Assembly (NCBI RefSeq): GCF_006345805.1
Contig: NW_021825765.1
Location: forward strand, 1-14,554
Direction of reading: 5' to 3'
Length of the DNA stretch: 14,554 nt
DNA from: Octopus sinensis
Lineage: Eukaryota
The stretch's first letter is position 1. Each line of letters begins with the position of its first letter. The position numbers and the translations under genes were made by a program. Below are positions 1,385 to 13,358 of this stretch, one piece after another. A model generated the notes under the pieces. The model had not been told where the DNA came from, made no database searches, and saw only the letters and a list, made by a program, of their open reading frames with translations.

Positions 1385-1449
1385 ATACACAATTCTGGTG
1401 CATCTAAATTAAGTACCATATTCATTTGAATCTAAATTTTTGCTGAACT

Positions 1450-1649
1450 TATAAATATATATATATATATATATATTAAATTAGAGATAAAACCACTATT
1501 AGGCAAATCAAACAGTGAAAAACATAAACCAATAAATAGAAATAAATTAATTAATATAATATACAAAATATACAAAATATACAAATATAAAATTCTAAAT
1601 TTAAATTTAAAGTTAAAATTTAAAAATATTTAAATTATTAATCTATACT

Positions 1650-1700
<51 letters not shown>

Positions 1701-2525
1701 ATTTTATTTTTTATTTCTATTATCATGATATTTTTTTTTTTATTATTATTATTTTTTTAAAAATAAATATTACTATCAAAAAGAATTAAAAGTTTAATAT
1801 AAGATAAAGAGTAAAACCACTACGATCGTTTCATGCTCATAATCTAATTCGAATAACAATAATTTAAATTCAATCAATAATTCGAATTATGGTTATAGTC
1901 AATCTTCAGGTTAATGATAATATTTAAATAAATAATCAAAAATATTTAAACAATATTTTTTAAGAAATGAATAAAATAATAATTTTTCTTATAAAAAACT
2001 CTATTATCAAACTAGAAACATTAACGATTATGATTATGTCATACAATCGATTATAATGTTAAATATTAATTTTTAAGTATTCATTTTTAAGGTAAGAAAC
2101 CCACAGTTATAGTCAATATCTAATTATATAAATATTTTACAAAAAAGAAAAAAAAATGACTATTCATATTATTAAATATAATTTCAAGTCGAATAATTAT
2201 ATAATATTTGAATAATAACTAAATTATCAATGAAAATATATAAATGTACATAAATATAAGAATTAAAATATTTAATTAAAATATTTATGAAATTAGATAT
2301 TGACTATAACTGAGATTAGATTAAGGTTTCATAACTTATAAATTAATACCAAAAAATTAATATTTAACATTATAATCGATTGTATGACGTAATCATAATT
2401 CGAATTATTAATTGAATTTAAATTATTGTTATTCGAATTAGATTATGGGCATGAAACGATCGTAGTGGTTTTACTCTTTATCTTATACTAAACTTTTAAT
2501 TCTTTTTGACAGTTATATTTATTAA

Positions 2526-2570
<45 letters not shown>

Positions 2571-2860
2571 TAATAATAATAATAATAAAATAAAAATAAT
2601 ATAATATTATATATATATATACACATATATATAAATATAATATATATATAAATTTATAAGTATAAATTGATAATTTAAATATTTTTAAAATTTTAACTTT
2701 AAATTTAAATTTAAATAATTCAAATTTTGAATTTTATATTTTGCATATTTTGTATATTATATTAATTAATTTATTTCTATTTATTGGTTTATGTTTTTCA
2801 CTGTTTGATTTGCCTAATAGTGGTTTTATCTCCAATTTAATTTAAATATATATATTTATA
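1450..2860. mobile_element. 1.4-kb AT-rich fold-back (arms 1450-2139 and 2277-2860, spacer 2140-2276); probable inverted pair of Penelope-like pseudo-LTR sequences
   Basis: Arms are reverse complements, e.g. GAGATAAAACCACTATTAGGCAAATCAAACAGTGAAAAACATAAACCAATAAATAGAAATAA (from ~1484) vs 2764-2832, and CAGTTATAGTCAATATCTAATT (2104-2125) vs 2291-2312. Both outer ends run into TA repeats. The inverted repeat is certain; the Penelope assignment is inferred from the hammerhead motif. Confidence 0.75.
1817..1912 (-). ncRNA. Degenerate type I hammerhead ribozyme motif
   Basis: Minus strand: CTGAAGA (1909-1903), a long helix II with a perfect distal 10 bp (TAATTCGAAT/ATTCGAATTA), GAAACGATCGTA (1832-1821) with palindromic ACGATCGT helix III and GUA site. 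Proximal helix II and helix I are mismatched. Confidence 0.55.
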
Positions 2861-2923
2861 CTGTTAAATTAGATTTAATCCTAAATCTAATTTTTCCCTG
2901 TATGTTTGGATTTACTCCCTAAT

Positions 2924-4960: not shown

Positions 4961-5975
4961 GGATGTATGCGATTGTATGAGGTGTTTTGCGTATTGTGTT
5001 ACTGTTTAGCATATCGTGACGGCAATCAAACCAATATGTCCGCCAAATGATATTGAAACGGTGTAGTACTGTGATAGCTTCACACTCTGTCTGTCTCTAA
5101 TAAATAATGTAATAAATAGCGGATGGAGGAGATGGGAGTTTATTGGTGACGAGAATAGTTCTGTTCTTGTTGTTATTAGTGGCTGGGGTGATGGCAGTTA
5201 TGATGGTGTGTGTATTTTAGCCTGGTCTGAGGTTTGATACGGTTTGGTTAGGTGTGGTGTGATATGATGTGATGGGATACAGTGTGTTGTGGATATAAGT
5301 CTTGCTTCTAGTGTTAGAGGTGGTTCTATTGTTTTATTACATTATATTGTATTACATATTGTTTTGTTGTAGTTTGACGCTCTTTATGCTCTATATTTGT
5401 CATATTTTGCTGTATTTTGTTTTATTTCCCTTCAATCTATCCATAATTTCTGGACATATATGAGGCGTCATCATTCGTTATTTTCGCATTATGATATAGA
5501 CTTTAAAATATTTTTTCTCTCTCTCTTCCTATATATACTATTTCTCCCTTTCTCCATCTGTTTCTTTTAATCACACTCATCGACCATCTATATACCTGCA
5601 TATTTATACATTAAACTATTTGCATCTCTTTTTCTCTGTCTCCCTCTCTCTTCCTATGCCCCTCTTTATCTCTCATCCTCTTTCTCTCCATTCTCTATCT
5701 AAATTCATATCCATTTTCGATCAATTTATCTACCTCCCTAAATGCACACACACGCACACACACGCACACAGACACAGGCACACACACAACTTTATATTTA
5801 TCTCTATACACATCTATCTATAGTACATAGAATGTATTCCATATAAAGATTCTCATTCTATCATTCTATATATCAATTTACGCACATCGCCTTCAATATA
5901 TAATCTATCTTCAACACTAACATACAGGCATCCAGGTTTATCTTTTAAATATATATTACAATAGATTAAACCTTA

Positions 5976-6193
5976 AAGACGGCAAGCTAGCAGATATGTT
6001 AGCACGCTGGGCGAAATGCTTACTGGCATTTCGTCTGTCTTTACGTTCCGAGTTCAAGTACCAGTGAGGTCGACTTTGCCTTTTATCTTTCGGGGATCGA
6101 TAAATTTAGTACCAGTTGCGTACAGGGGTCGATCTAATCGACTTGTCCCCTCCTCAAAAATTCGGGCCTTGTGTCTAGAATAGAAAAGAATGT
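5976..6193 (+). mobile_element. Full-length tRNA-derived SINE (octopus OK-like, name tentative)
   Basis: tRNA-like head GACGGCAAGCTAGCAGATATGTTAGCAC, B-box-like GAGTTCAAGT (~6050), body CTTTCGGGGATCGATAAATTTAGTACCAG; 11-bp TSD ATTAAACCTTA at 5965-5975 and 6194-6204. Confidence 0.9.
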
Positions 6194-6882: not shown

Positions 6883-7118
6883 ATTAGGGCGGCGAGCTGG
6901 TAGAAACGTTAGCACGCCGGCCGAAATGCTTAGCAGTATTTCGTATGTCGCTACGTTCTGAGCTCAAATCCCGCTGAGGTCGACTTTGCCTTCCATCCTT
7001 TCGGGGTCGATAAATTAAGTACCAGTTACGCACTGGGGTCGATATAATCGACTTAATCCGTTTGTCTGTCCTTGTTTGTCTCCTCTGTGTTTAGCCCCTT
7101 GTGAGTAGTAAAGAAATA
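6883..7118 (+). mobile_element. Full-length tRNA-derived SINE (same head/body as 5976-6193, different tail)
   Basis: Head GGCGGCGAGCTGGTAGAAACGTTAGCACG from 6888, B-box-like GAGCTCAAATCC; 12-bp TSD GGTAGTCATGAG at 6871-6882 and 7119-7130; inserted in a GGT/GTA low-complexity tract. Confidence 0.92.
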
Positions 7119-8198: not shown

Positions 8199-8268
8199 TA
8201 CTTATTTTTGCCAGCTGAGTGAACTTCAGAAGCGTGAAATAAAGAGCTCAAGAACACAACACATCACC
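8199..8268 (-). mobile_element. Isolated central (CORE-like) fragment of the SINE family seen at 14061-14374
   Basis: Reverse complement GGTGATGTGTTGTGTTCTTGAGCTCTTTATTTCACGCTTCTGAAGTTCACTCAGCTGGCAAAAATAAGT aligns to ~14122-14195. Confidence 0.8.
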
Positions 8269-8366
8269 TTGTTGAGGGATCTAACTATTTAGATACACAC
8301 CTCCACACATGTACACATACACACAAATTTATGTTTGTGTTTATATTCATACATATATGTATGTAT

Positions 8367-8846
8367 GTTAAACATGGAGGAGGATCTGTGATTATCTGGG
8401 GTGGTGTGGAGGCTATATCTTGGAAATCCGCCGGCCCAGTGGTTTTCTTTCATGGCAGAATTAATAGTCAAACCTATTTAAGCATTTTATCTGATCAAAT
8501 TCATTCTATGTTGCGGAACCGTTACAGAATGGCACGAGGAACATTCTAGTGAAGTTGAACACCTTATCTGGCCACCACAGTTCCCAGATCTCAATATTAT
8601 TCAACATTTATGGTGCATTTTAGAAAAACAAGTAAGGAGTCGATATCATCCACCATCATCACTACAAGAACTGGAGACTATTTTAGCTGAAGAATGGACA
8701 AAAATTCTTTTGGAAACAATTCAAACTTTGTACGAGTCAATATCTCATAGAATTCAAGTTGTAATTACTACCAAAGGCGGTCCTACCCCATATTAAAATA
8801 AATTTGTTTGAAATATAAGGCGTTTCCATAATTTTGTCCAACCCCT

Positions 8847-8847
<1 letters not shown>
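8367..8847 (+). mobile_element. 3' half of a Tc1-family DNA transposon (transposase pseudogene plus right TIR)
   Basis: VKHGGGSVIIWG..AISWKSAGP...GRINSQTYLSILSDQIH from 8367; frameshift; EWHEEHSSEVEHLIWPPQFPDLNIIQHLWCILEKQV...KGGPTPY* (8527-8796), the Tc1 WPPQSPDLNPIE motif. TIR-like GTTTCCATAATTTTGTCCAACCCCTC at 8822-8847, followed by a TA run. Confidence 0.92.
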
Positions 8848-8882
<35 letters not shown>

Positions 8883-8905: not shown

Positions 8906-11150
8906 CGTAATAGGAGCTCGGTCATGCGAATTTTTGTCGTGACGTAGGAGCGGAAATCTGCAGTACGAGCGAGTTTCATACAAACGACAGCTACTCGGCT
9001 CTGAGTTCGCGCCCGCTCTCCAAACAGGTACGGTCTTCGCTCGCTCAGTTCACGTGTTTATCTCGTTGTGGTAGCAACCTTGTTGTGTTTTCCAAGTGCT
9101 TTTGCTTAGTTTGGGGCATTTTTTGCTATCATTTTATAATAATTAGTTGTGTTAGCTATGGGTCCTAAGAAGGTTGGTCCAAAGGATAGTGCTGAGAAGA
9201 AGAAAAAGCTGATTGCGATAGAATTGAAGAAAGAAAACACTGATAAACATGAGAGGAGTGCGTGTAGTGGACATAGCACGTTAATACAAACGAAGTACAT
9301 CGACGATTTGGACCATCCTAAAGAAAAAGGTCGAGACCAAGGCGGTTACAACAGCAACTCACATCTGTCCACGAAAATGATGGAAAAATTACTTCCCTTG
9401 TGGATCAACGAGAAGCAACACGCAGGGGATATGATTACGGAGATCATCTTCTGTGAGAAAGCATGAGCGCTGTATAGAGATTACCTGAAGCAGAACCCTG
9501 GAACATCGATGGAGGAGACATTAGCAGACGCATTTAAATCCAGTTGCAGCTGGTTTGATAATTTCAAGAAGAGGACTGGTGTTCATAGCATCGTCAGATA
9601 TGGAGAAGCAGCGAGTTCTGACACGAAGGCAGTTGAAGATTTCGTGAGTGAATTCCGTCAGCTCATCGCAGCCGAGGGGGGTACATCGCACAAACCGGTA
9701 TTCAACTGTGGTGAAACTGGTCTATTTTTTTTGAAAAAAATGCCAAGTCATAAAACCATGAATGATAGGCTTGCTCTCGGCCTTGTGCCAATGCAAGTCA
9801 GTCGAGACTTGAAGATTAAGCCGCTCTTAGCCTACCATTCCGAAAATCCAGAGCGTTCAAGTCGCACAAAATCCTGAAGGAGAAGCTGCAGGTATGTGGA
9901 TGGCAAACGTTAAAGCCTGGGTCAACAGGCAATTCTTCTCCAAGTGGGTCAACCTTGTCTTCGGACCAGTAGTGAAAAAGTACCTTCTGGAGAACAATCT
10001 TCCTCTCAACACCCTCCTCATCCTCGACAATGCTCCTGCTCACCCACCTAACCTCGAAGATGATATCCTGGTCGAATTTAAATTCATAAAAGTTCTGTAT
10101 CTTTCACACAGCACCACCCCTATCTTGTATCCCATGGACCAATAGGTGATTCATAATTTTAAGTAACTGTACACCGAATACCTGTTTTGTCGGTACTTTG
10201 AAGTCACCAAAAATACAAATGTAATCCTTCGTGAGTTTTGGAAGGAGCACTACAACGTTGTAAACTAACTGAAAATCATCGATATGGCCGGGCAGGATGT
10301 AATGAGGAGATCGTTGAATTCTGCATAGAAGAAGCTGTGGCCTGACTGCGTATCTGAAAGAGACTTCGAAGGGTTTGAGTTTGAGACACATGTAGTTGAG
10401 AAGATGGTATCTCTTGGCAAGTCCATGGGCATCGAGGTTGATGATGGGTATATTAACGATCTCGTCGAGGAAAACTCAGAAGAGGTGATGAGAGATGCAC
10501 TCCTGCAGTTTCACGAGCAGCAGTATTTGGATGCATTGGAGGATAGTGTAGCAGAGAAGGCTAGCAGTATTAGTGTTGGCAAAGTGGCAGTATGTTTCTG
10601 AATTTGTAGAAAAATATCATCTTGCAAAAGTAGCCACAGGTCGTGCAGCTGCTTTATTGAAATGACTTTGCTCTCGTGCATTTTCGTAACATTTTGAAAG
10701 GCAGGAAAAAACTGACTTCTCTTGATATGTTTCTAATGAAACGATCCACAAGAATAAAAAGTGAAGATAGGGTTCCAAAAAGCCTAAATTAAGCGGAGAG
10801 AGAAAACCCCAGAAATTGTTCTTCCTGAAGTTTTAATGGAGGAGAATCTCCTTCCAAACAGTAATCCGCCTCCTCGCTCGATCGTCTTCATCGCTCACAA
10901 ATCGTCCCATCTTTAAGGTTAATAAAATAAGTTTATATATTTCTGTTGCATTCTCTTTCGTTAGAATTGTCATTTTACTTGTAACTACACTTTCTTTGTT
11001 TTAAAACGCATAAAAAATTACTTTTGAGTGGTTTTTAGTGGGCTGGAACGGATAAATTATATTTTAATTAATTTCAATGGGGAACATGGATTTGTAAAAC
11101 GAGTAAAAAGTAAAACGTAAGATTTAAACTCATAGTGCGAGGTATTACTG
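8906..11150 (+). mobile_element. Near full-length Tigger/pogo DNA transposon, decayed
   Basis: Contains the transposase relic below. Right end ...GAGGTATTACTG|TA (11150; TA at 11151-52). The left end TA|CGTAATA.. (8904-8912) is a degenerate match to the inverted CAGTAATA, so the left boundary is less certain. Confidence 0.85.
9158..10864 (+). pseudogene. Tigger/pogo (TIGD1-like) transposase pseudogene
   Basis: MGPKK..KKKLIAIELKKE; MEKLLPLWINEKQHAGD..TE.I.CEKA; FKSSCSWFDNFKKR (CENP-B type HTH); VFNCGETGLF; LILDNAPAHP; TTPILYPMDQ; LGKSMGIEVD; C-terminal ..PSKQ* ending 10864. Many stops and frameshifts split it across ORFs 9149, 9509, 9894 and 10404. Confidence 0.93.
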
Positions 11151-11262: not shown

Positions 11263-11303
11263 ATTATATATATATATATATATTATATATATATATACAT
11301 AAT

Positions 11304-12119
11304 ATATATAATTATAATAAAGGGTTATTTGCAAGACGTTGCTTAAACCACATACCGAAAATATTAGAAATAGCAGCCAAATAGGTTACCATTACTATTA
11401 CTACAAGAATAAGTCACCACAAACAACAATATTTGTAACCCGTATATGAGTAAAAAGAAGGAAGACAATGAAATCACACAGTCTAATTTGGATCAATTAT
11501 GGACGAATCGTTTCTGGATTAGAATCGAAAATTCATTTCCTCATCAACATAATATTTCCTATAAATCTAGAAATGCTAGGAAAAAACTCACCCATTACAT
11601 CAACTCGACCAGGCGACATCGAACGATATAACGGTCTGCCAGCATCTCCACATTTATATAGACAAGCGAATTCGTATCTCCCTCCAAAATTTCACCACGT
11701 GAGTTACAAAAACAGTACCACCGAAACGAAGTTTCGCAGATTCACTGTATGGGAGTAATAGTATTCGATACATATAAAGGGTGAAATATAATTAATTTAA
11801 TAAAATTAATAAATTTCACCTAGTAGTTTTTTCGGTATGGAAAGGACCATATTCGGTAAAAATTATATATAATTATAATAAAGGGTCATTTGCAACAAGT
11901 TGTTTAAACCACATACCGAAAATATTAGAAATAGCAGCCGAATTTTCGATTCTAATCCAGAAACGATTCGTCCATAATTGATCCAAATTAGACTGTTTGA
12001 TTTCGTTGTCTTCCTTCTTTTTTACCATATACGGGTTACAAATACTGTTGTTTGTGGAGACACTTATTTTTCTAGTAATAGTAATCTATTTGGCTGCTAT
12101 TTCTAATATTTTCGGTATG
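11304..12119. mobile_element. (TA)n-anchored element with a 561-bp-period partial tandem repeat plus ~180-bp inverted copy; Penelope-like architecture, family unassigned
   Basis: 11304-11378 repeated directly at 11865-11939 (4 mismatches in 75 bp); 11351-11534 repeated inverted at 11940-12119. Confidence 0.7.
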
Positions 12120-12156: not shown

Positions 12157-12344
12157 ACAAGGACAGACAAACGGATTAAGTCGATTATATCGACCCCAGT
12201 GGGTAGTTGGTACTTATTTAATCGACCCCGAAAGGATAAAAGGCAAAGTCGAGCTCGGCGGAAATTGAACTCAGAACGTAGCGGCAGACGAAATACCGCA
12301 AAGCATTTCGCCCGGCGTGCTAACGTTTCTGCCAGCTCACCGCC
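12157..12344 (-). mobile_element. tRNA-derived SINE, same subfamily as 6883-7118, 3' tail truncated
   Basis: Reverse complement matches 6888-7073 at roughly 90% by eye, including TAATCCGTTTGTCTGTCCTTGT. The remaining tail and a TSD are not seen. Confidence 0.92.
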
Positions 12345-12625
12345 TTTTAAATCACTATATTTATATATAATTGATAATGCAACCGTTTCCCTGCATTATG
12401 AGATCTAGTTGTGTTTCCTGAGGCGACATGTAAATATTGTCCCCGTATCATCAATTCTCGGCTTCGAGAGCATCCTCTCTGTGTGTCGTGTTCTGAAGTT
12501 AGTAGAAGCCACTGAGTTTATCAAAATGTGTTGTTATTGAAGGACAGTTGGCAAACTGCTTTAAGTGTGTAGATTTTTGAGTAGATCTGAAGGTAGAGGA
12601 ACTTCTTTCTCTGTACACACCACAC

Positions 12626-12630
<5 letters not shown>

Positions 12631-12676
<46 letters not shown>
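12631..12676. repeat. (TA)n microsatellite
   Basis: Perfect TA run. Confidence 0.95.
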
Positions 12677-12678
<2 letters not shown>

Positions 12679-12826
12679 GGAGTAAGCACATAAATGTGAA
12701 ACAAGGTGGAAAAAAAGTACTCAAATACCAGAGGTAGAGTATGCTTTATTTTGTTAACAAAACTGTCCGACGAACGGGAACGTGAAACTCCGAGTAACAG
12801 CTTTTGTTATATTTCTGCTGCTTTTA
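12677..12826. mobile_element. Short non-coding element between TA-rich tracts carrying a hammerhead; probable Penelope-like pseudo-LTR remnant
   Basis: Unique 150-bp island between TA-rich tracts. AATAAA on the minus strand (TTTATT 12745-12750) about 70 nt from the TA run; hammerhead at 12755-12809. Confidence 0.55.
12755..12809 (+). ncRNA. Minimal type I hammerhead ribozyme, U4C core variant
   Basis: Helix I TAACAAAA-CTGT (12755-66) / ACAG-c-TTTTGTTA (12797-809); core CCGACGA (12767-73); helix II ACG-GGAA-CGT (12774-83); GAAA (12784-87); helix III ACT-CCG-AGT (12787-95); GUA triplet with predicted cleavage after 12796. Confidence 0.8.
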
Positions 12827-13358
12827 AGTAAAGTATTTATATATATGTATATATATATACATACATATTACACATATATATATATATGTATATATATGTT
12901 TATATGTATATATATATATATGTATGGAAGTCGATATACATAAATGTATGTGTGCGTGTGTGTATGTGTGCATGTGTGTGCGCGCGTGTGTGTGTGAGTA
13001 TGCGTGTATATGTGTGTTTGTGTGTATTTGGCCTAGCCTATATTTTCGTATAAATAAAAGTTGGCCTGTGTATGCGCTTTTTAGTATCATAATAATTCCC
13101 TGCAGTAATTGATTCTGCTTCGAATGTGTTCTATTGTTATGTTCGAGCGCTGGAGTAGGGCGACCCACCTGCTTTTCTCTTCTTTCTCTATATACAGTCA
13201 TTCATTACGTTCGCATGGCCGAACTTTAAGACCTTGTCTCGGTTGTGCTGCTTACTCAAGCGTTTATAGAGTAAAACTATTATGTGCCAATTACGATCGT
13301 GTTGCCGTGTGTGTGAAATATTTGTTCTAGAATTGCACGCTGACACACAAGAACATGC

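What the first reader, a model, noticed from the sequence alone, without database searches (positions are those of the whole stretch)
12755..12809. Intact-looking minimal hammerhead ribozyme with a non-canonical CCGACGA core
Every hammerhead element is present in order: 12-bp helix I with one bulge, core, 3-bp helix II closed by a GGAA (GNRA) tetraloop, GAAA, helix III and a GUA cleavage triplet. Unusual points: C at position 4 instead of the conserved U, an A-U pair at 10.1-11.1, and a near-palindromic helix III (ACTC-C-GAGT) that could pair between two molecules, as reported for dimer-cleaving Penelope-associated hammerheads. If active and high-copy, it indicates a core-variant ribozyme family in a non-coding mobile element, which could also cut host transcripts that read through it. 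Novelty relative to published variants is unverified.
Basis: partly seen in the sequence, partly recalled or inferred. Interest (0 to 1): 0.85.

Follow-up and report, generated by a model that had tools for sequence, protein, structure and literature searches.

The report
Lone hammerhead-shaped motif, probably inactive
The sequence really can be drawn as a small hammerhead ribozyme, but it is a single copy with two of the most conserved positions changed and no detectable relatives, so it is either a dead relic of a ribozyme-carrying jumping gene or a chance look-alike.

Summary
The motif is at the stated coordinates. It has a 12-bp helix I with bulged C12801, core CCGACGA (C4 = 12768), helix II ACG-GGAA-CGT, GAAA, ACTCCGAGT and A17 = 12796. 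Helix III cannot form 4 bp around a 1-nt loop; it forms at most 3 bp.

Chance gives about 7e-5 such compact motifs per window, or a few per Gb.

Several results argue against an active ribozyme family:
- There is no second copy in the window and no Penelope-like coding sequence.
- No Rfam hammerhead model matches, even at E<=10.
- U4 and G10.1-C11.1 are both changed.
- Helix II forms with probability 0.15 because a competing pairing is favoured.
- The 157-nt surrounding block shows no significant structure.
- Inverted repeats like helix I are common here (7 in 14.5 kb).
- No relatives were found in any collection, but the animal source genome is not held, so copy number and C4 fixation stay untested.

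Three results favour a real origin. The GAAAC-small near-palindrome-GUH format matches natural animal type I hammerheads. The motif sits in a 157-nt island between two (TA)n tracts, a preferred Penelope-like target. Contigs sharing a Tc1 family with the window carry two perfect-core hammerheads next to (TA)n.

Verdict: relic about 0.45, chance about 0.40, active variant about 0.08. Interest is low.

The parts
12626..12676 (.). Pure (AT)25 microsatellite forming the left edge of the island
   Evidence: TRF, 95% matches; sequence
12677..12833 (+). 157-nt non-repetitive island between two (TA)n tracts; candidate insertion that carries the motif
   Evidence: Sequence; unique within the window by blastn; TRF borders; folding z-scores -1.4 (+) and -1.9 (-), not significant
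12755..12766 (+). Helix I, 5' strand (TAACAAAACTGT)
   Evidence: Sequence; pairing probability 0.85-1.0 in the isolated 55-mer, but in the 160-nt block it pairs upstream instead
12767..12773 (+). Core strand CCGACGA: C3, C4 (consensus U), G5, A6, C7, G8, A9
   Evidence: Sequence; only core-like site found by the descriptor scan
12774..12783 (+). Helix II hairpin ACG-GGAA-CGT: 3 bp, A10.1-U11.1, GNRA-type loop
   Evidence: Sequence; pairing probability only 0.15, outcompeted by CGGG(12775-78)/UCCG(12789-92) at 0.48
12784..12787 (+). G12 A13 A14 A15.1
   Evidence: Sequence
12787..12795 (+). Helix III region ACTCCGAGT: 2-3 bp as a monomer; 4+4 bp with a C.C mismatch as an intermolecular duplex
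   Evidence: Sequence; monomer pairing probability 0.02 and duplex -9.8 kcal/mol; same weak-helix-III behaviour in a natural coral hammerhead
12796..12796 (+). A17; predicted scissile bond is 12796|12797
   Evidence: Position in the hammerhead numbering, inferred from the layout; not tested
12797..12809 (+). Helix I, 3' strand (ACAGcTTTTGTTA), C12801 bulged
   Evidence: Sequence; descriptor scan gives 4 + 8 bp
12834..12925 (.). Imperfect (TA)46 tract forming the right edge of the island
   Evidence: TRF, 76% matches

Best explanation
The motif is a solitary, degenerate hammerhead of the animal type I kind. It is carried on a 157-nt fragment, either the 3' end of a Penelope-like element or a lone retrozyme-like monomer, that inserted into a (TA)n microsatellite. 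In its source element the ribozyme would have cut the element's transcript after position 17. It would probably have worked as a dimer through the near-palindromic helix III.

This copy is most likely inactive or nearly so, for five reasons:
- It has C instead of U at position 4, which removes the uridine turn of the core.
- It has an A-U pair in place of G10.1-C11.1.
- Its 3-bp helix II loses to a competing pairing.
- It has an extra C that spoils the UCGA palindrome of loop 3.
- No second copy is nearby to dimerise with.

Shown: the layout, the (TA)n island, the absence of a partner, and the unfavourable folding. Inferred: the retroelement origin, the ancestral activity, and the present inactivity.
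For: (1) The full ordered layout is present with 10 of 11 conserved core bases. It is compact, and the chance rate is about 7e-5 per window or lower.

(2) The 3' half reads GAAAC-UCCGA-GUA. Natural invertebrate and amphibian type I hammerheads read GAAAC-(4-6 nt palindrome)-GUH: coral AGUACU-GUC, mussel GCGC-GUC, axolotl ACGU-GUA. The axolotl Ax353 hammerhead also lacks G10.1-C11.1 (supplement of PMC7229834; main text).

(3) The motif lies in a 157-nt island between (AT)25 and (TA)46. Only about 1% of window positions lie in such a gap. (TA)n is a reported preferred target of Penelope-like elements, and their hammerheads sit near the 3' end (PMC8557442).

(4) 79 kb of contigs from ENA assembly ERZ21867824 share a Tc1 family with the window at 78-85% nucleotide identity. 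They hold two perfect-core hammerheads, both beside (TA)n:
- L013 13103-13132 is a canonical type I hammerhead, matching the Rfam hammerhead clan at 25 bits, E = 7e-4.
- L009 6672-6709 is a Penelope-type minimal hammerhead with a 10-nt palindromic helix III.

(5) Rfam also gives nothing for L009, so Rfam's silence on the window motif does not exclude a minimal hammerhead.

(6) Weak helix III is normal in natural type I hammerheads (coral control).
Against: - No homologue of the motif or of the 157-nt block was found anywhere. The retroelement origin therefore rests on context alone.
- There is no reverse transcriptase or GIY-YIG remnant in the window, no tandem repeat of the block, and no target-site duplication.
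- The features that a hammerhead-shaped search does not force mostly sit at chance values rather than at the natural consensus. N7 is C rather than U. The 10.1-11.1 pair is A-U rather than G-C. Helix II has the minimum 3 bp. There are no loop 1-loop 2 contact motifs.
- It does not fit the Penelope minimal type, which has helix II of 6-8 bp, an unpaired base after A9 and helix I of 4-5 bp (PMC4209133). It does not fit the canonical type I either.
- Neutral decay that hit U4 and both partners of 10.1-11.1 while leaving all 17 other helix pairs intact is unlikely.
- (TA)n tracts are frequent here, 11 in 14.5 kb, and I noticed the island after the fact.
Confidence: 0.45

Rival explanations
1. The motif is a chance look-alike. 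One of the many AT-rich inverted repeats in this repeat-laden DNA happens to enclose 30 nt that match the relaxed hammerhead pattern with one core mismatch. It has no ribozyme ancestry and no function.
For: - Inverted repeats of >=12 Watson-Crick bp (<=1 bulge, 25-45 nt spacer) occur 7 times in this window outside dinucleotide repeats. With G-U pairs allowed there are 35 clusters.
- Of 67 compact chance hits in 400 Mb of random sequence, 64 carry exactly one core mismatch, as here.
- Every unforced feature is at its minimum or at background: 3-bp helix II, 3-bp helix III, an A-U pair at 10.1-11.1 in a 35% GC genome, and N7 = C.
- No Rfam hammerhead match at E<=10.
- The 76-nt stretch containing the motif folds no better than shuffles (z = -0.06), and the 160-nt block is not significant (z = -1.4).
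- A few such motifs per Gb are expected.
- The exact helix II plus core string recurs by chance in 7 unrelated bacterial coding regions.
Against: - The per-window chance is only about 1e-5 to 1e-4 at this quality.
- C15.2-G16.2 and the near-palindromic loop 3 match the natural format.
- Placement in a (TA)n-bounded island has about 1% prior probability.
- Genuine hammerheads are abundant in many invertebrate genomes (PMC4209133, PMC7229834). They are also present in contigs that share a transposon family with this window.
Confidence: 0.4
2. One reading: a functional core-variant (C4) hammerhead belonging to a multi-copy non-coding mobile family, which cleaves as a monomer or as a dimer through helix III.
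For: - All helices are intact despite the core change.
- A U4C hammerhead is tolerated in vivo in a viroid (PMC3088659).
- Natural hammerheads with non-G-C 10.1-11.1 and GUA triplets cleave as dimers in axolotl (PMC7229834).
- The intermolecular helix III duplex is predicted to form in a two-copy fold.
Against: - It is a single copy with no dimer partner in 14.5 kb.
- No family was found.
- There are no tertiary loop-loop elements, which are what let natural core variants keep activity (PMC3088659).
- C4 strengthens a competing CCG/CGG hairpin that ties up C3-G5 in the dimer fold.
- Helix II probability is 0.15.
- In the full block, helix I and helix III strands pair elsewhere.
Confidence: 0.08
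3. The inverted repeat and its interior serve some other role, such as a transposon end, a small-RNA hairpin or a protein-binding palindrome, and the hammerhead resemblance is incidental.
For: - TTTTGTTAACAAAA (12749-12762) is a perfect palindrome.
- TTTTGTTA recurs at 12802-12809, so 8-bp direct repeats flank 12757-12801.
Against: - No Rfam family of any kind reaches threshold.
- There are no terminal inverted repeats at the island ends and no other copy.
- Folding is not better than shuffles.
Confidence: 0.05

Closest known systems
Canonical animal type I hammerheads of non-LTR retrozymes (coral, mussel, axolotl; PMC7229834)
   Same: - Type I topology, with helix I open.
- The order core-helix II-GAAAC-small (near-)palindromic loop 3-GUH.
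- A very weak helix III that suggests action as a dimer.
- AT-rich surroundings.
- A GUA triplet and a non-G-C 10.1-11.1 pair both occur in the axolotl Ax353 hammerhead.
   Different: - Those have U4.
- Helix I is about 6 bp with a loop 1 that contacts loop 2.
- Helix II is usually 4 bp or more and forms stably (probability 0.8-1.0 in my controls against 0.15 here).
- They sit in tandem repeats of about 170-400 bp present in thousands of copies.
- Here there is one copy in a 157-nt block, C4, a 3-bp helix II with a GNRA loop, and an odd-length loop 3 (UCCGA).
Minimal hammerheads of Penelope-like elements (Cervera and de la Pena 2014, PMC4209133; Lunse et al. 2017, not readable here)
   Same: - Type I topology with a short palindrome-like helix III implying dimer cleavage.
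- Low expected activity.
- Frequent occurrence as solitary, truncated copies.
- Association of the elements with (TA)n targets (PMC8557442).
   Different: - Penelope-type motifs have helix II of 6-8 bp, an unpaired base between A9 and 10.1, conserved G10.1-C11.1, and helix I of 4-5 bp.
- They lie in pseudo-LTRs next to a reverse transcriptase / GIY-YIG reading frame.
- None of these is met here.
Natural U4C hammerhead variant in a viroid (cited in Perreault et al. 2011, PMC3088659)
   Same: The same core substitution. It shows that C4 is not absolutely incompatible with biological function.
   Different: The viroid ribozyme has stabilising peripheral contacts and is under selection in a replicating RNA. 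The present motif has no such contacts and no evidence of selection.
Textbook minimal hammerhead (three short helices, no tertiary contacts)
   Same: Same bare architecture, including a short helix II closed by a tetraloop.
   Different: Minimal constructs keep the full consensus core and need high Mg2+. From my own recollection of the 1990 Ruffner, Stormo and Uhlenbeck mutagenesis (not checked here), changing U4 in such a background lowers the rate by orders of magnitude.

Membership tests
Hammerhead ribozyme (general consensus; Rfam clan CL00010) | Three helices around a junction in the order I - CUGANGA - II - GAAA - III - UH - I | tested here: met
   Sequence 12755-12809; only hit of a descriptor scan on both strands
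Hammerhead ribozyme (general consensus; Rfam clan CL00010) | Conserved core bases C3 U4 G5 A6 G8 A9 G12 A13 A14 A15.1 U16.1, with H17 | tested here: not met
   10 of 11 are present. Position 4 is C (12768). U4C is reported to lower activity considerably (PMC3088659).
Hammerhead ribozyme (general consensus; Rfam clan CL00010) | G10.1-C11.1 closing pair of helix II (most conserved pair after A15.1-U16.1) | tested here: not met
   The pair is A12774-T12783. Natural exceptions exist: U-U in bacterial and axolotl motifs (PMC3088659; PMC7229834).
Hammerhead ribozyme (general consensus; Rfam clan CL00010) | Score against a curated hammerhead covariance model | tested here: not met
   No hammerhead family is listed at gathering score, nor at E<=10 in 251 nt or 69 nt. 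Controls: L013 gives 25 bits; the Penelope-type L009 motif gives nothing, so the test is insensitive to minimal variants.
Hammerhead ribozyme (general consensus; Rfam clan CL00010) | Conservation and covariation of the helices among homologues | tested here: inconclusive
   No homologue was obtained in the window, metagenome, viral, prokaryote-genome or protein-derived searches. The source genome is not held.
Hammerhead ribozyme (general consensus; Rfam clan CL00010) | Site-specific self-cleavage 3' of position 17 | not testable with these tools
   Needs transcription and cleavage assays or RNA end mapping.
Penelope-like-element minimal hammerhead | Location in a pseudo-LTR next to a reverse transcriptase / GIY-YIG reading frame, or in a recognisable truncated copy | tested here: not met
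   Stop-to-stop frames of the whole window show only Tc1, Tigger and unclassified fragments. The block has no match elsewhere.
Penelope-like-element minimal hammerhead | Helix II of 6-8 bp with an unpaired base between A9 and 10.1; helix I of 4-5 bp | tested here: not met
   Helix II is 3 bp with no unpaired base, and helix I is 12 bp. Criteria from PMC4209133.
Penelope-like-element minimal hammerhead | Palindromic 15.2-16.2 / loop 3 allowing a dimer | tested here: inconclusive
   CUCCGAG is CUCGAG plus one C. The duplex forms with a central C.C mismatch, -9.8 kcal/mol.
Non-LTR retrozyme (tandem repeats with type I hammerheads) | Two or more head-to-tail units of about 170-400 bp, each with a hammerhead | tested here: not met
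   One 157-nt block, with no tandem or dispersed second copy in 14.5 kb. Solo monomers are known, however (bioRxiv 10.64898/2026.07.22.740005).
Non-LTR retrozyme (tandem repeats with type I hammerheads) | Unit RNA folds into a stable, highly self-paired structure | tested here: not met
   Block MFE is -33.8 kcal/mol, z = -1.4 on the + strand and -1.9 on the - strand.

The most novel reading that the evidence does not exclude
The motif is one member of an undescribed family of short, TA-microsatellite-targeting non-autonomous retroelements. Their hammerhead has fixed C4 and A10.1-U11.1 and still cleaves, as a dimer through the CUCCGAG helix III. That would show that the uridine turn of the core can be replaced in nature without peripheral tertiary contacts.
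Probability: 0.05. Interest if true: 0.55.

Novelty: new member of a known kind. Interest (0 to 1): 0.17.

Why it matters
If the motif is a relic, it adds one more degenerate hammerhead to the many thousands already catalogued in invertebrate genomes, and little follows from it. If it is a chance match, it is a useful caution. With one core mismatch allowed, hammerhead-shaped sequences arise a few times per Gb of AT-rich, inverted-repeat-rich DNA. It would matter for ribozyme biology only if a search of the source genome showed many copies with C4 fixed and compensated helices. That would be a natural core variant lacking the U-turn uridine.

Tried and rejected
- **Rfam** was run at gathering score on the whole window and at E<=10 on 251 nt and 69 nt. 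No hammerhead family appeared; the only hits were AT-repeat microRNA look-alikes.
- **Self-comparison of the window** found no second copy of the block or motif.
- **Public DNA pattern scans:**
  - CNGANGAACGGGAACGTGAAAC in metagenomes gave 7 hits. All are 53-69% GC bacterial contigs (several sharing flanks, apparently coding) without helices I or III, so I treat them as chance.
  - The same pattern in viral contigs gave 0 hits.
  - A core-plus-helix-III pattern in prokaryote genomes and viral contigs gave 0 hits.
- **'ORF trick'.** I searched the 43-codon open minus frame across the block against predicted proteins, in the hope that spurious ORFs had been called on other copies. There was no candidate. 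The exhaustive search gave one weak hit to a tandem-repeat protein at 31% identity, which I rejected as spurious.
- **Looking up window ORFs** to locate the source contig: three attempts, none on record.
- **Taxon identification** through transposase fragments:
  - The best Tigger match is 59% (Octopus bimaculoides), with 75% over half the query from a Logan run.
  - The best Tc1 match is 71-75%.
  - The source remains an unidentified invertebrate-like genome.
I used it only to reach related contigs.
- **CpG argument** on the direction of the U4-to-C change: dropped, because CpG observed/expected is 0.95 in the window.
- **Literature string search** for the helix III and core strings returned only shRNA loop sequences.
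- **Papers not held:** Lunse et al. 2017 and Ferbeyre et al. 2000.
- **tRNA-like promoter** upstream of the motif: ARAGORN finds none.
I replaced it with stop-to-stop fragments.

Full report
**What is there**

The window is eukaryote-like. GC is 15-44%. Tandem Repeats Finder gives 45 rows, including eleven (TA)n tracts. There are decayed Tc1 and Tigger transposase fragments and several unclassified repeat families.

At 12755-12809 on the + strand the sequence reads TAACAAAACTGT CCGACGA ACG GGAA CGT GAAA CTC C GAG T A ACAG C TTTTGTTA.
- Helix I has 12 Watson-Crick pairs with C12801 bulged.
- The core is C3 C4 G5 A6 C7 G8 A9.
- Helix II has 3 bp (A10.1-U11.1) closed by GGAA.
- G12 A13 A14 A15.1 follows.
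- Helix III is ACUCCGAGU.
- A17 is at 12796.

The one inaccuracy concerns helix III. Four pairs around a single-base loop cannot form. A monomer gets 2-3 pairs. Two molecules could form 4+4 pairs around a C.C mismatch.

**Is it more than chance?**

A descriptor scan finds this site and nothing else on either strand, and it finds no perfect-core motif. Shuffles of the window give 0.0025 hits per window for the C.GA.GA core, and none with a long helix I.

In 400 Mb of first-order Markov sequence, compact motifs of this kind occur as follows:

| Helix I length | Hits per window | Per Gb of genome |
|---|---|---|
| >=4 | 2.4e-3 | 165 |
| >=10 | 7e-5 | about 5 |
| >=12 | none seen | none seen |

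Helix I itself is cheap here. Seven inverted repeats of >=12 Watson-Crick pairs with a 25-45 nt spacer exist in this window outside dinucleotide repeats, and 35 clusters exist if G-U pairs are allowed. The motif is therefore improbable for a single window but expected a few times in a large genome. I do not know how many windows were scanned.

**Tests of the ribozyme reading**

- *Rfam.* No hammerhead family is listed at the gathering score, nor at E<=10 even when only 69 nt are searched. As controls I used two hammerheads found in related contigs (described under context). The near-canonical one scores 25 bits, E = 7e-4. The Penelope-type minimal one scores nothing. Rfam's silence therefore excludes a canonical type I hammerhead but not a minimal variant.
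- *Folding of the 55-mer.* The hammerhead fold is worth -8.1 kcal/mol against an MFE of -10.9. Helix II forms with probability 0.15 and helix III with 0.02. A competing CGGG/UCCG pairing has probability 0.48.
- *Controls for folding.* A natural coral hammerhead also has helix III near zero, so that part is normal. However, its helix II forms with probability 1.0, and that of L013 with 0.8.
- *Folding of the whole block.* In the 160-nt block, helix I and helix III strands pair elsewhere, and the fold is not better than shuffles (z = -1.4 and -1.9). The 76-nt stretch has z = -0.06.
- *Core and helix II positions.* U4 and G10.1-C11.1 are among the best-conserved positions. G10.1-C11.1 is the most conserved pair after A15.1-U16.1 (PMC3088659; PMC4209133). 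From general knowledge of the hammerhead structure, U4 makes the uridine turn and contacts the phosphate between A6 and N7. Perreault et al. note that contact. A cytosine cannot donate the N3-H.
- *Known precedent for C4.* A U4C variant is known in a viroid. It is much weaker in vitro yet sufficient in vivo. Perreault et al. ascribe the tolerance of natural core variants to peripheral tertiary contacts, which this motif lacks.

**Context**

No second copy of the motif or of its surroundings exists in the window, so there is no partner for dimer cleavage within 12.7 kb upstream or 1.7 kb downstream. No reverse transcriptase or GIY-YIG remnant is visible.

The motif does sit in a 157-nt non-repetitive island (12677-12833) between a pure (AT)25 and an imperfect (TA)46 tract. 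Only about 1% of window positions lie in such a gap. Penelope-like elements are reported to prefer (TA)n targets and to carry their hammerhead near the 3' end (PMC8557442; PMC11167929). That is the main positive argument for a mobile-element origin. It is post hoc, and (TA)n is common here.

**Related sequences**

Every route to homologues failed:
- The metagenome pattern scan gave 7 hits, all 53-69% GC bacterial contigs (apparently coding) without the helices.
- The viral and prokaryote-genome scans gave nothing.
- Translated-frame searches of the block gave nothing credible.
- Window ORFs are not on record.

The source genome is simply not in the collections. The best transposase identities are 59-75%.

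Contigs of ENA assembly ERZ21867824 share the Tc1 family at 78-85% nucleotide identity but none of the other window repeats, so they come from a different species. In 79 kb of them I found two convincing perfect-core hammerheads:
- L013 13103-13132 reads CTGATGA GTTCT-GAT-AGAAC GAAAC AGATCT GTC. It is preceded by a box-B-like GGTTTCGATCCC and followed by (TA)n.
- L009 6672-6709 has an extra U after A9, a 5-bp helix II and a 10-nt palindromic helix III. It lies about 70 nt after a (TA)n-T20 tract.

This shows that such genomes can be dense in hammerheads next to (TA)n, which raises the prior for a genuine relic. It says nothing about C4.

**Comparison with known kinds**

Natural retrozyme hammerheads (supplement of PMC7229834) share the GAAAC-small palindrome-GUH format. 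The window has UCCGA, which is the UCGA palindrome plus one C. The axolotl Ax353 motif shows that a GUA triplet and a non-G-C 10.1-11.1 pair occur in real hammerheads that cleave mainly as dimers.

The window motif nevertheless lacks several things:
- the loop 1-loop 2 contacts, 4-bp helix II and tandem organisation of retrozymes;
- the long helix II, unpaired base after A9 and short helix I of Penelope minimal hammerheads.

Most features that a hammerhead-shaped search does not force sit at background values: N7 = C, A-U at 10.1-11.1, and minimum-length helices II and III. That is what chance predicts. C15.2-G16.2, the near-palindromic loop 3, the GNRA loop and the long helix I go the other way.

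**Weighing**

A rough odds calculation combines the rates above, the (TA)n island and an unknown density of true hammerheads in the source genome. It spans roughly 1:5 to 6:1 for 'derived from a real hammerhead element' against 'chance'. My probabilities are:

| Explanation | Probability |
|---|---|
| Solitary, probably inactive relic | about 0.45 |
| Chance look-alike | about 0.40 |
| Some other role for the hairpin | about 0.05 |

A search of the source assembly would settle it in minutes.

**Verdict**

Novelty is low, because both hammerhead relics and a U4C variant are known. Interest is low unless the genome search shows a C4-fixed family. No step had to be referred.

Noticed in passing
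window 1446-2870: Nested long inverted repeats in a stretch of about 15% GC: 1446-1676/2640-2870 (231 nt, 82%), 1729-1895/2390-2556 (167 nt, 92%) and 2027-2101/2325-2399 (75 nt, 91%). Together they look like a foldback-type element of about 1.4 kb.
   Followed up: no
window 5975-6144 (+), 6888-7075 (+), 12157-12347 (-): Three copies (80-90% identical) of an unclassified ~170-190-nt interspersed repeat, SINE- or MITE-like. One copy lies about 400 nt upstream of the motif but is not joined to it.
   Followed up: partly
window 11303-12119: Composite repeat. 11303-11382 and 11864-11943 are direct copies (94%). 11351-11534 and 11940-12119 are inverted copies (91%).
   Followed up: no
window 8238-8878 and 9143-10816: Decayed Tc1/mariner transposase (DDE_3) and, directly downstream, a decayed Tigger/pogo transposase (DDE_1). 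The Tigger part aligns at 76% over 1.7 kb to a Logan contig (L008). The Tc1 part aligns at 78-85% to five contigs of ENA assembly ERZ21867824.
   Followed up: partly
window, whole: Extreme microsatellite load: 45 TRF rows, eleven (TA)n tracts, and long (TCCA)18, (ATAC)31, (TCTT)26 and (TATC)34 arrays. There is no CpG depletion (observed/expected 0.95). The source organism was not identified.
   Followed up: partly
L013 13020-13165: Near-canonical type I hammerhead (perfect core, 5-bp helix II, AGATCT loop 3, GUC). It lies just after a sequence containing a box-B-like GGTTTCGATCCC and just before a (TA)n tract, an arrangement that recalls schistosome SINE-like hammerhead elements. Rfam hammerhead clan 25 bits, below gathering score. 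ARAGORN finds no tRNA.
   Followed up: partly
L009 6560-6720: Penelope-type minimal hammerhead: perfect core, an extra U after A9, and the 10-nt palindrome CACTATAGTG as helix III. It lies about 70 nt downstream of a (TA)n-T20 tract. It is invisible to Rfam at E<=10.
   Followed up: partly
window 12749-12809: TTTTGTTAACAAAA is a perfect 14-nt palindrome overlapping the 5' strand of helix I. TTTTGTTA recurs at 12802-12809, so 8-bp direct repeats bracket the 45 nt that contain the core. Significance unknown.
   Followed up: no
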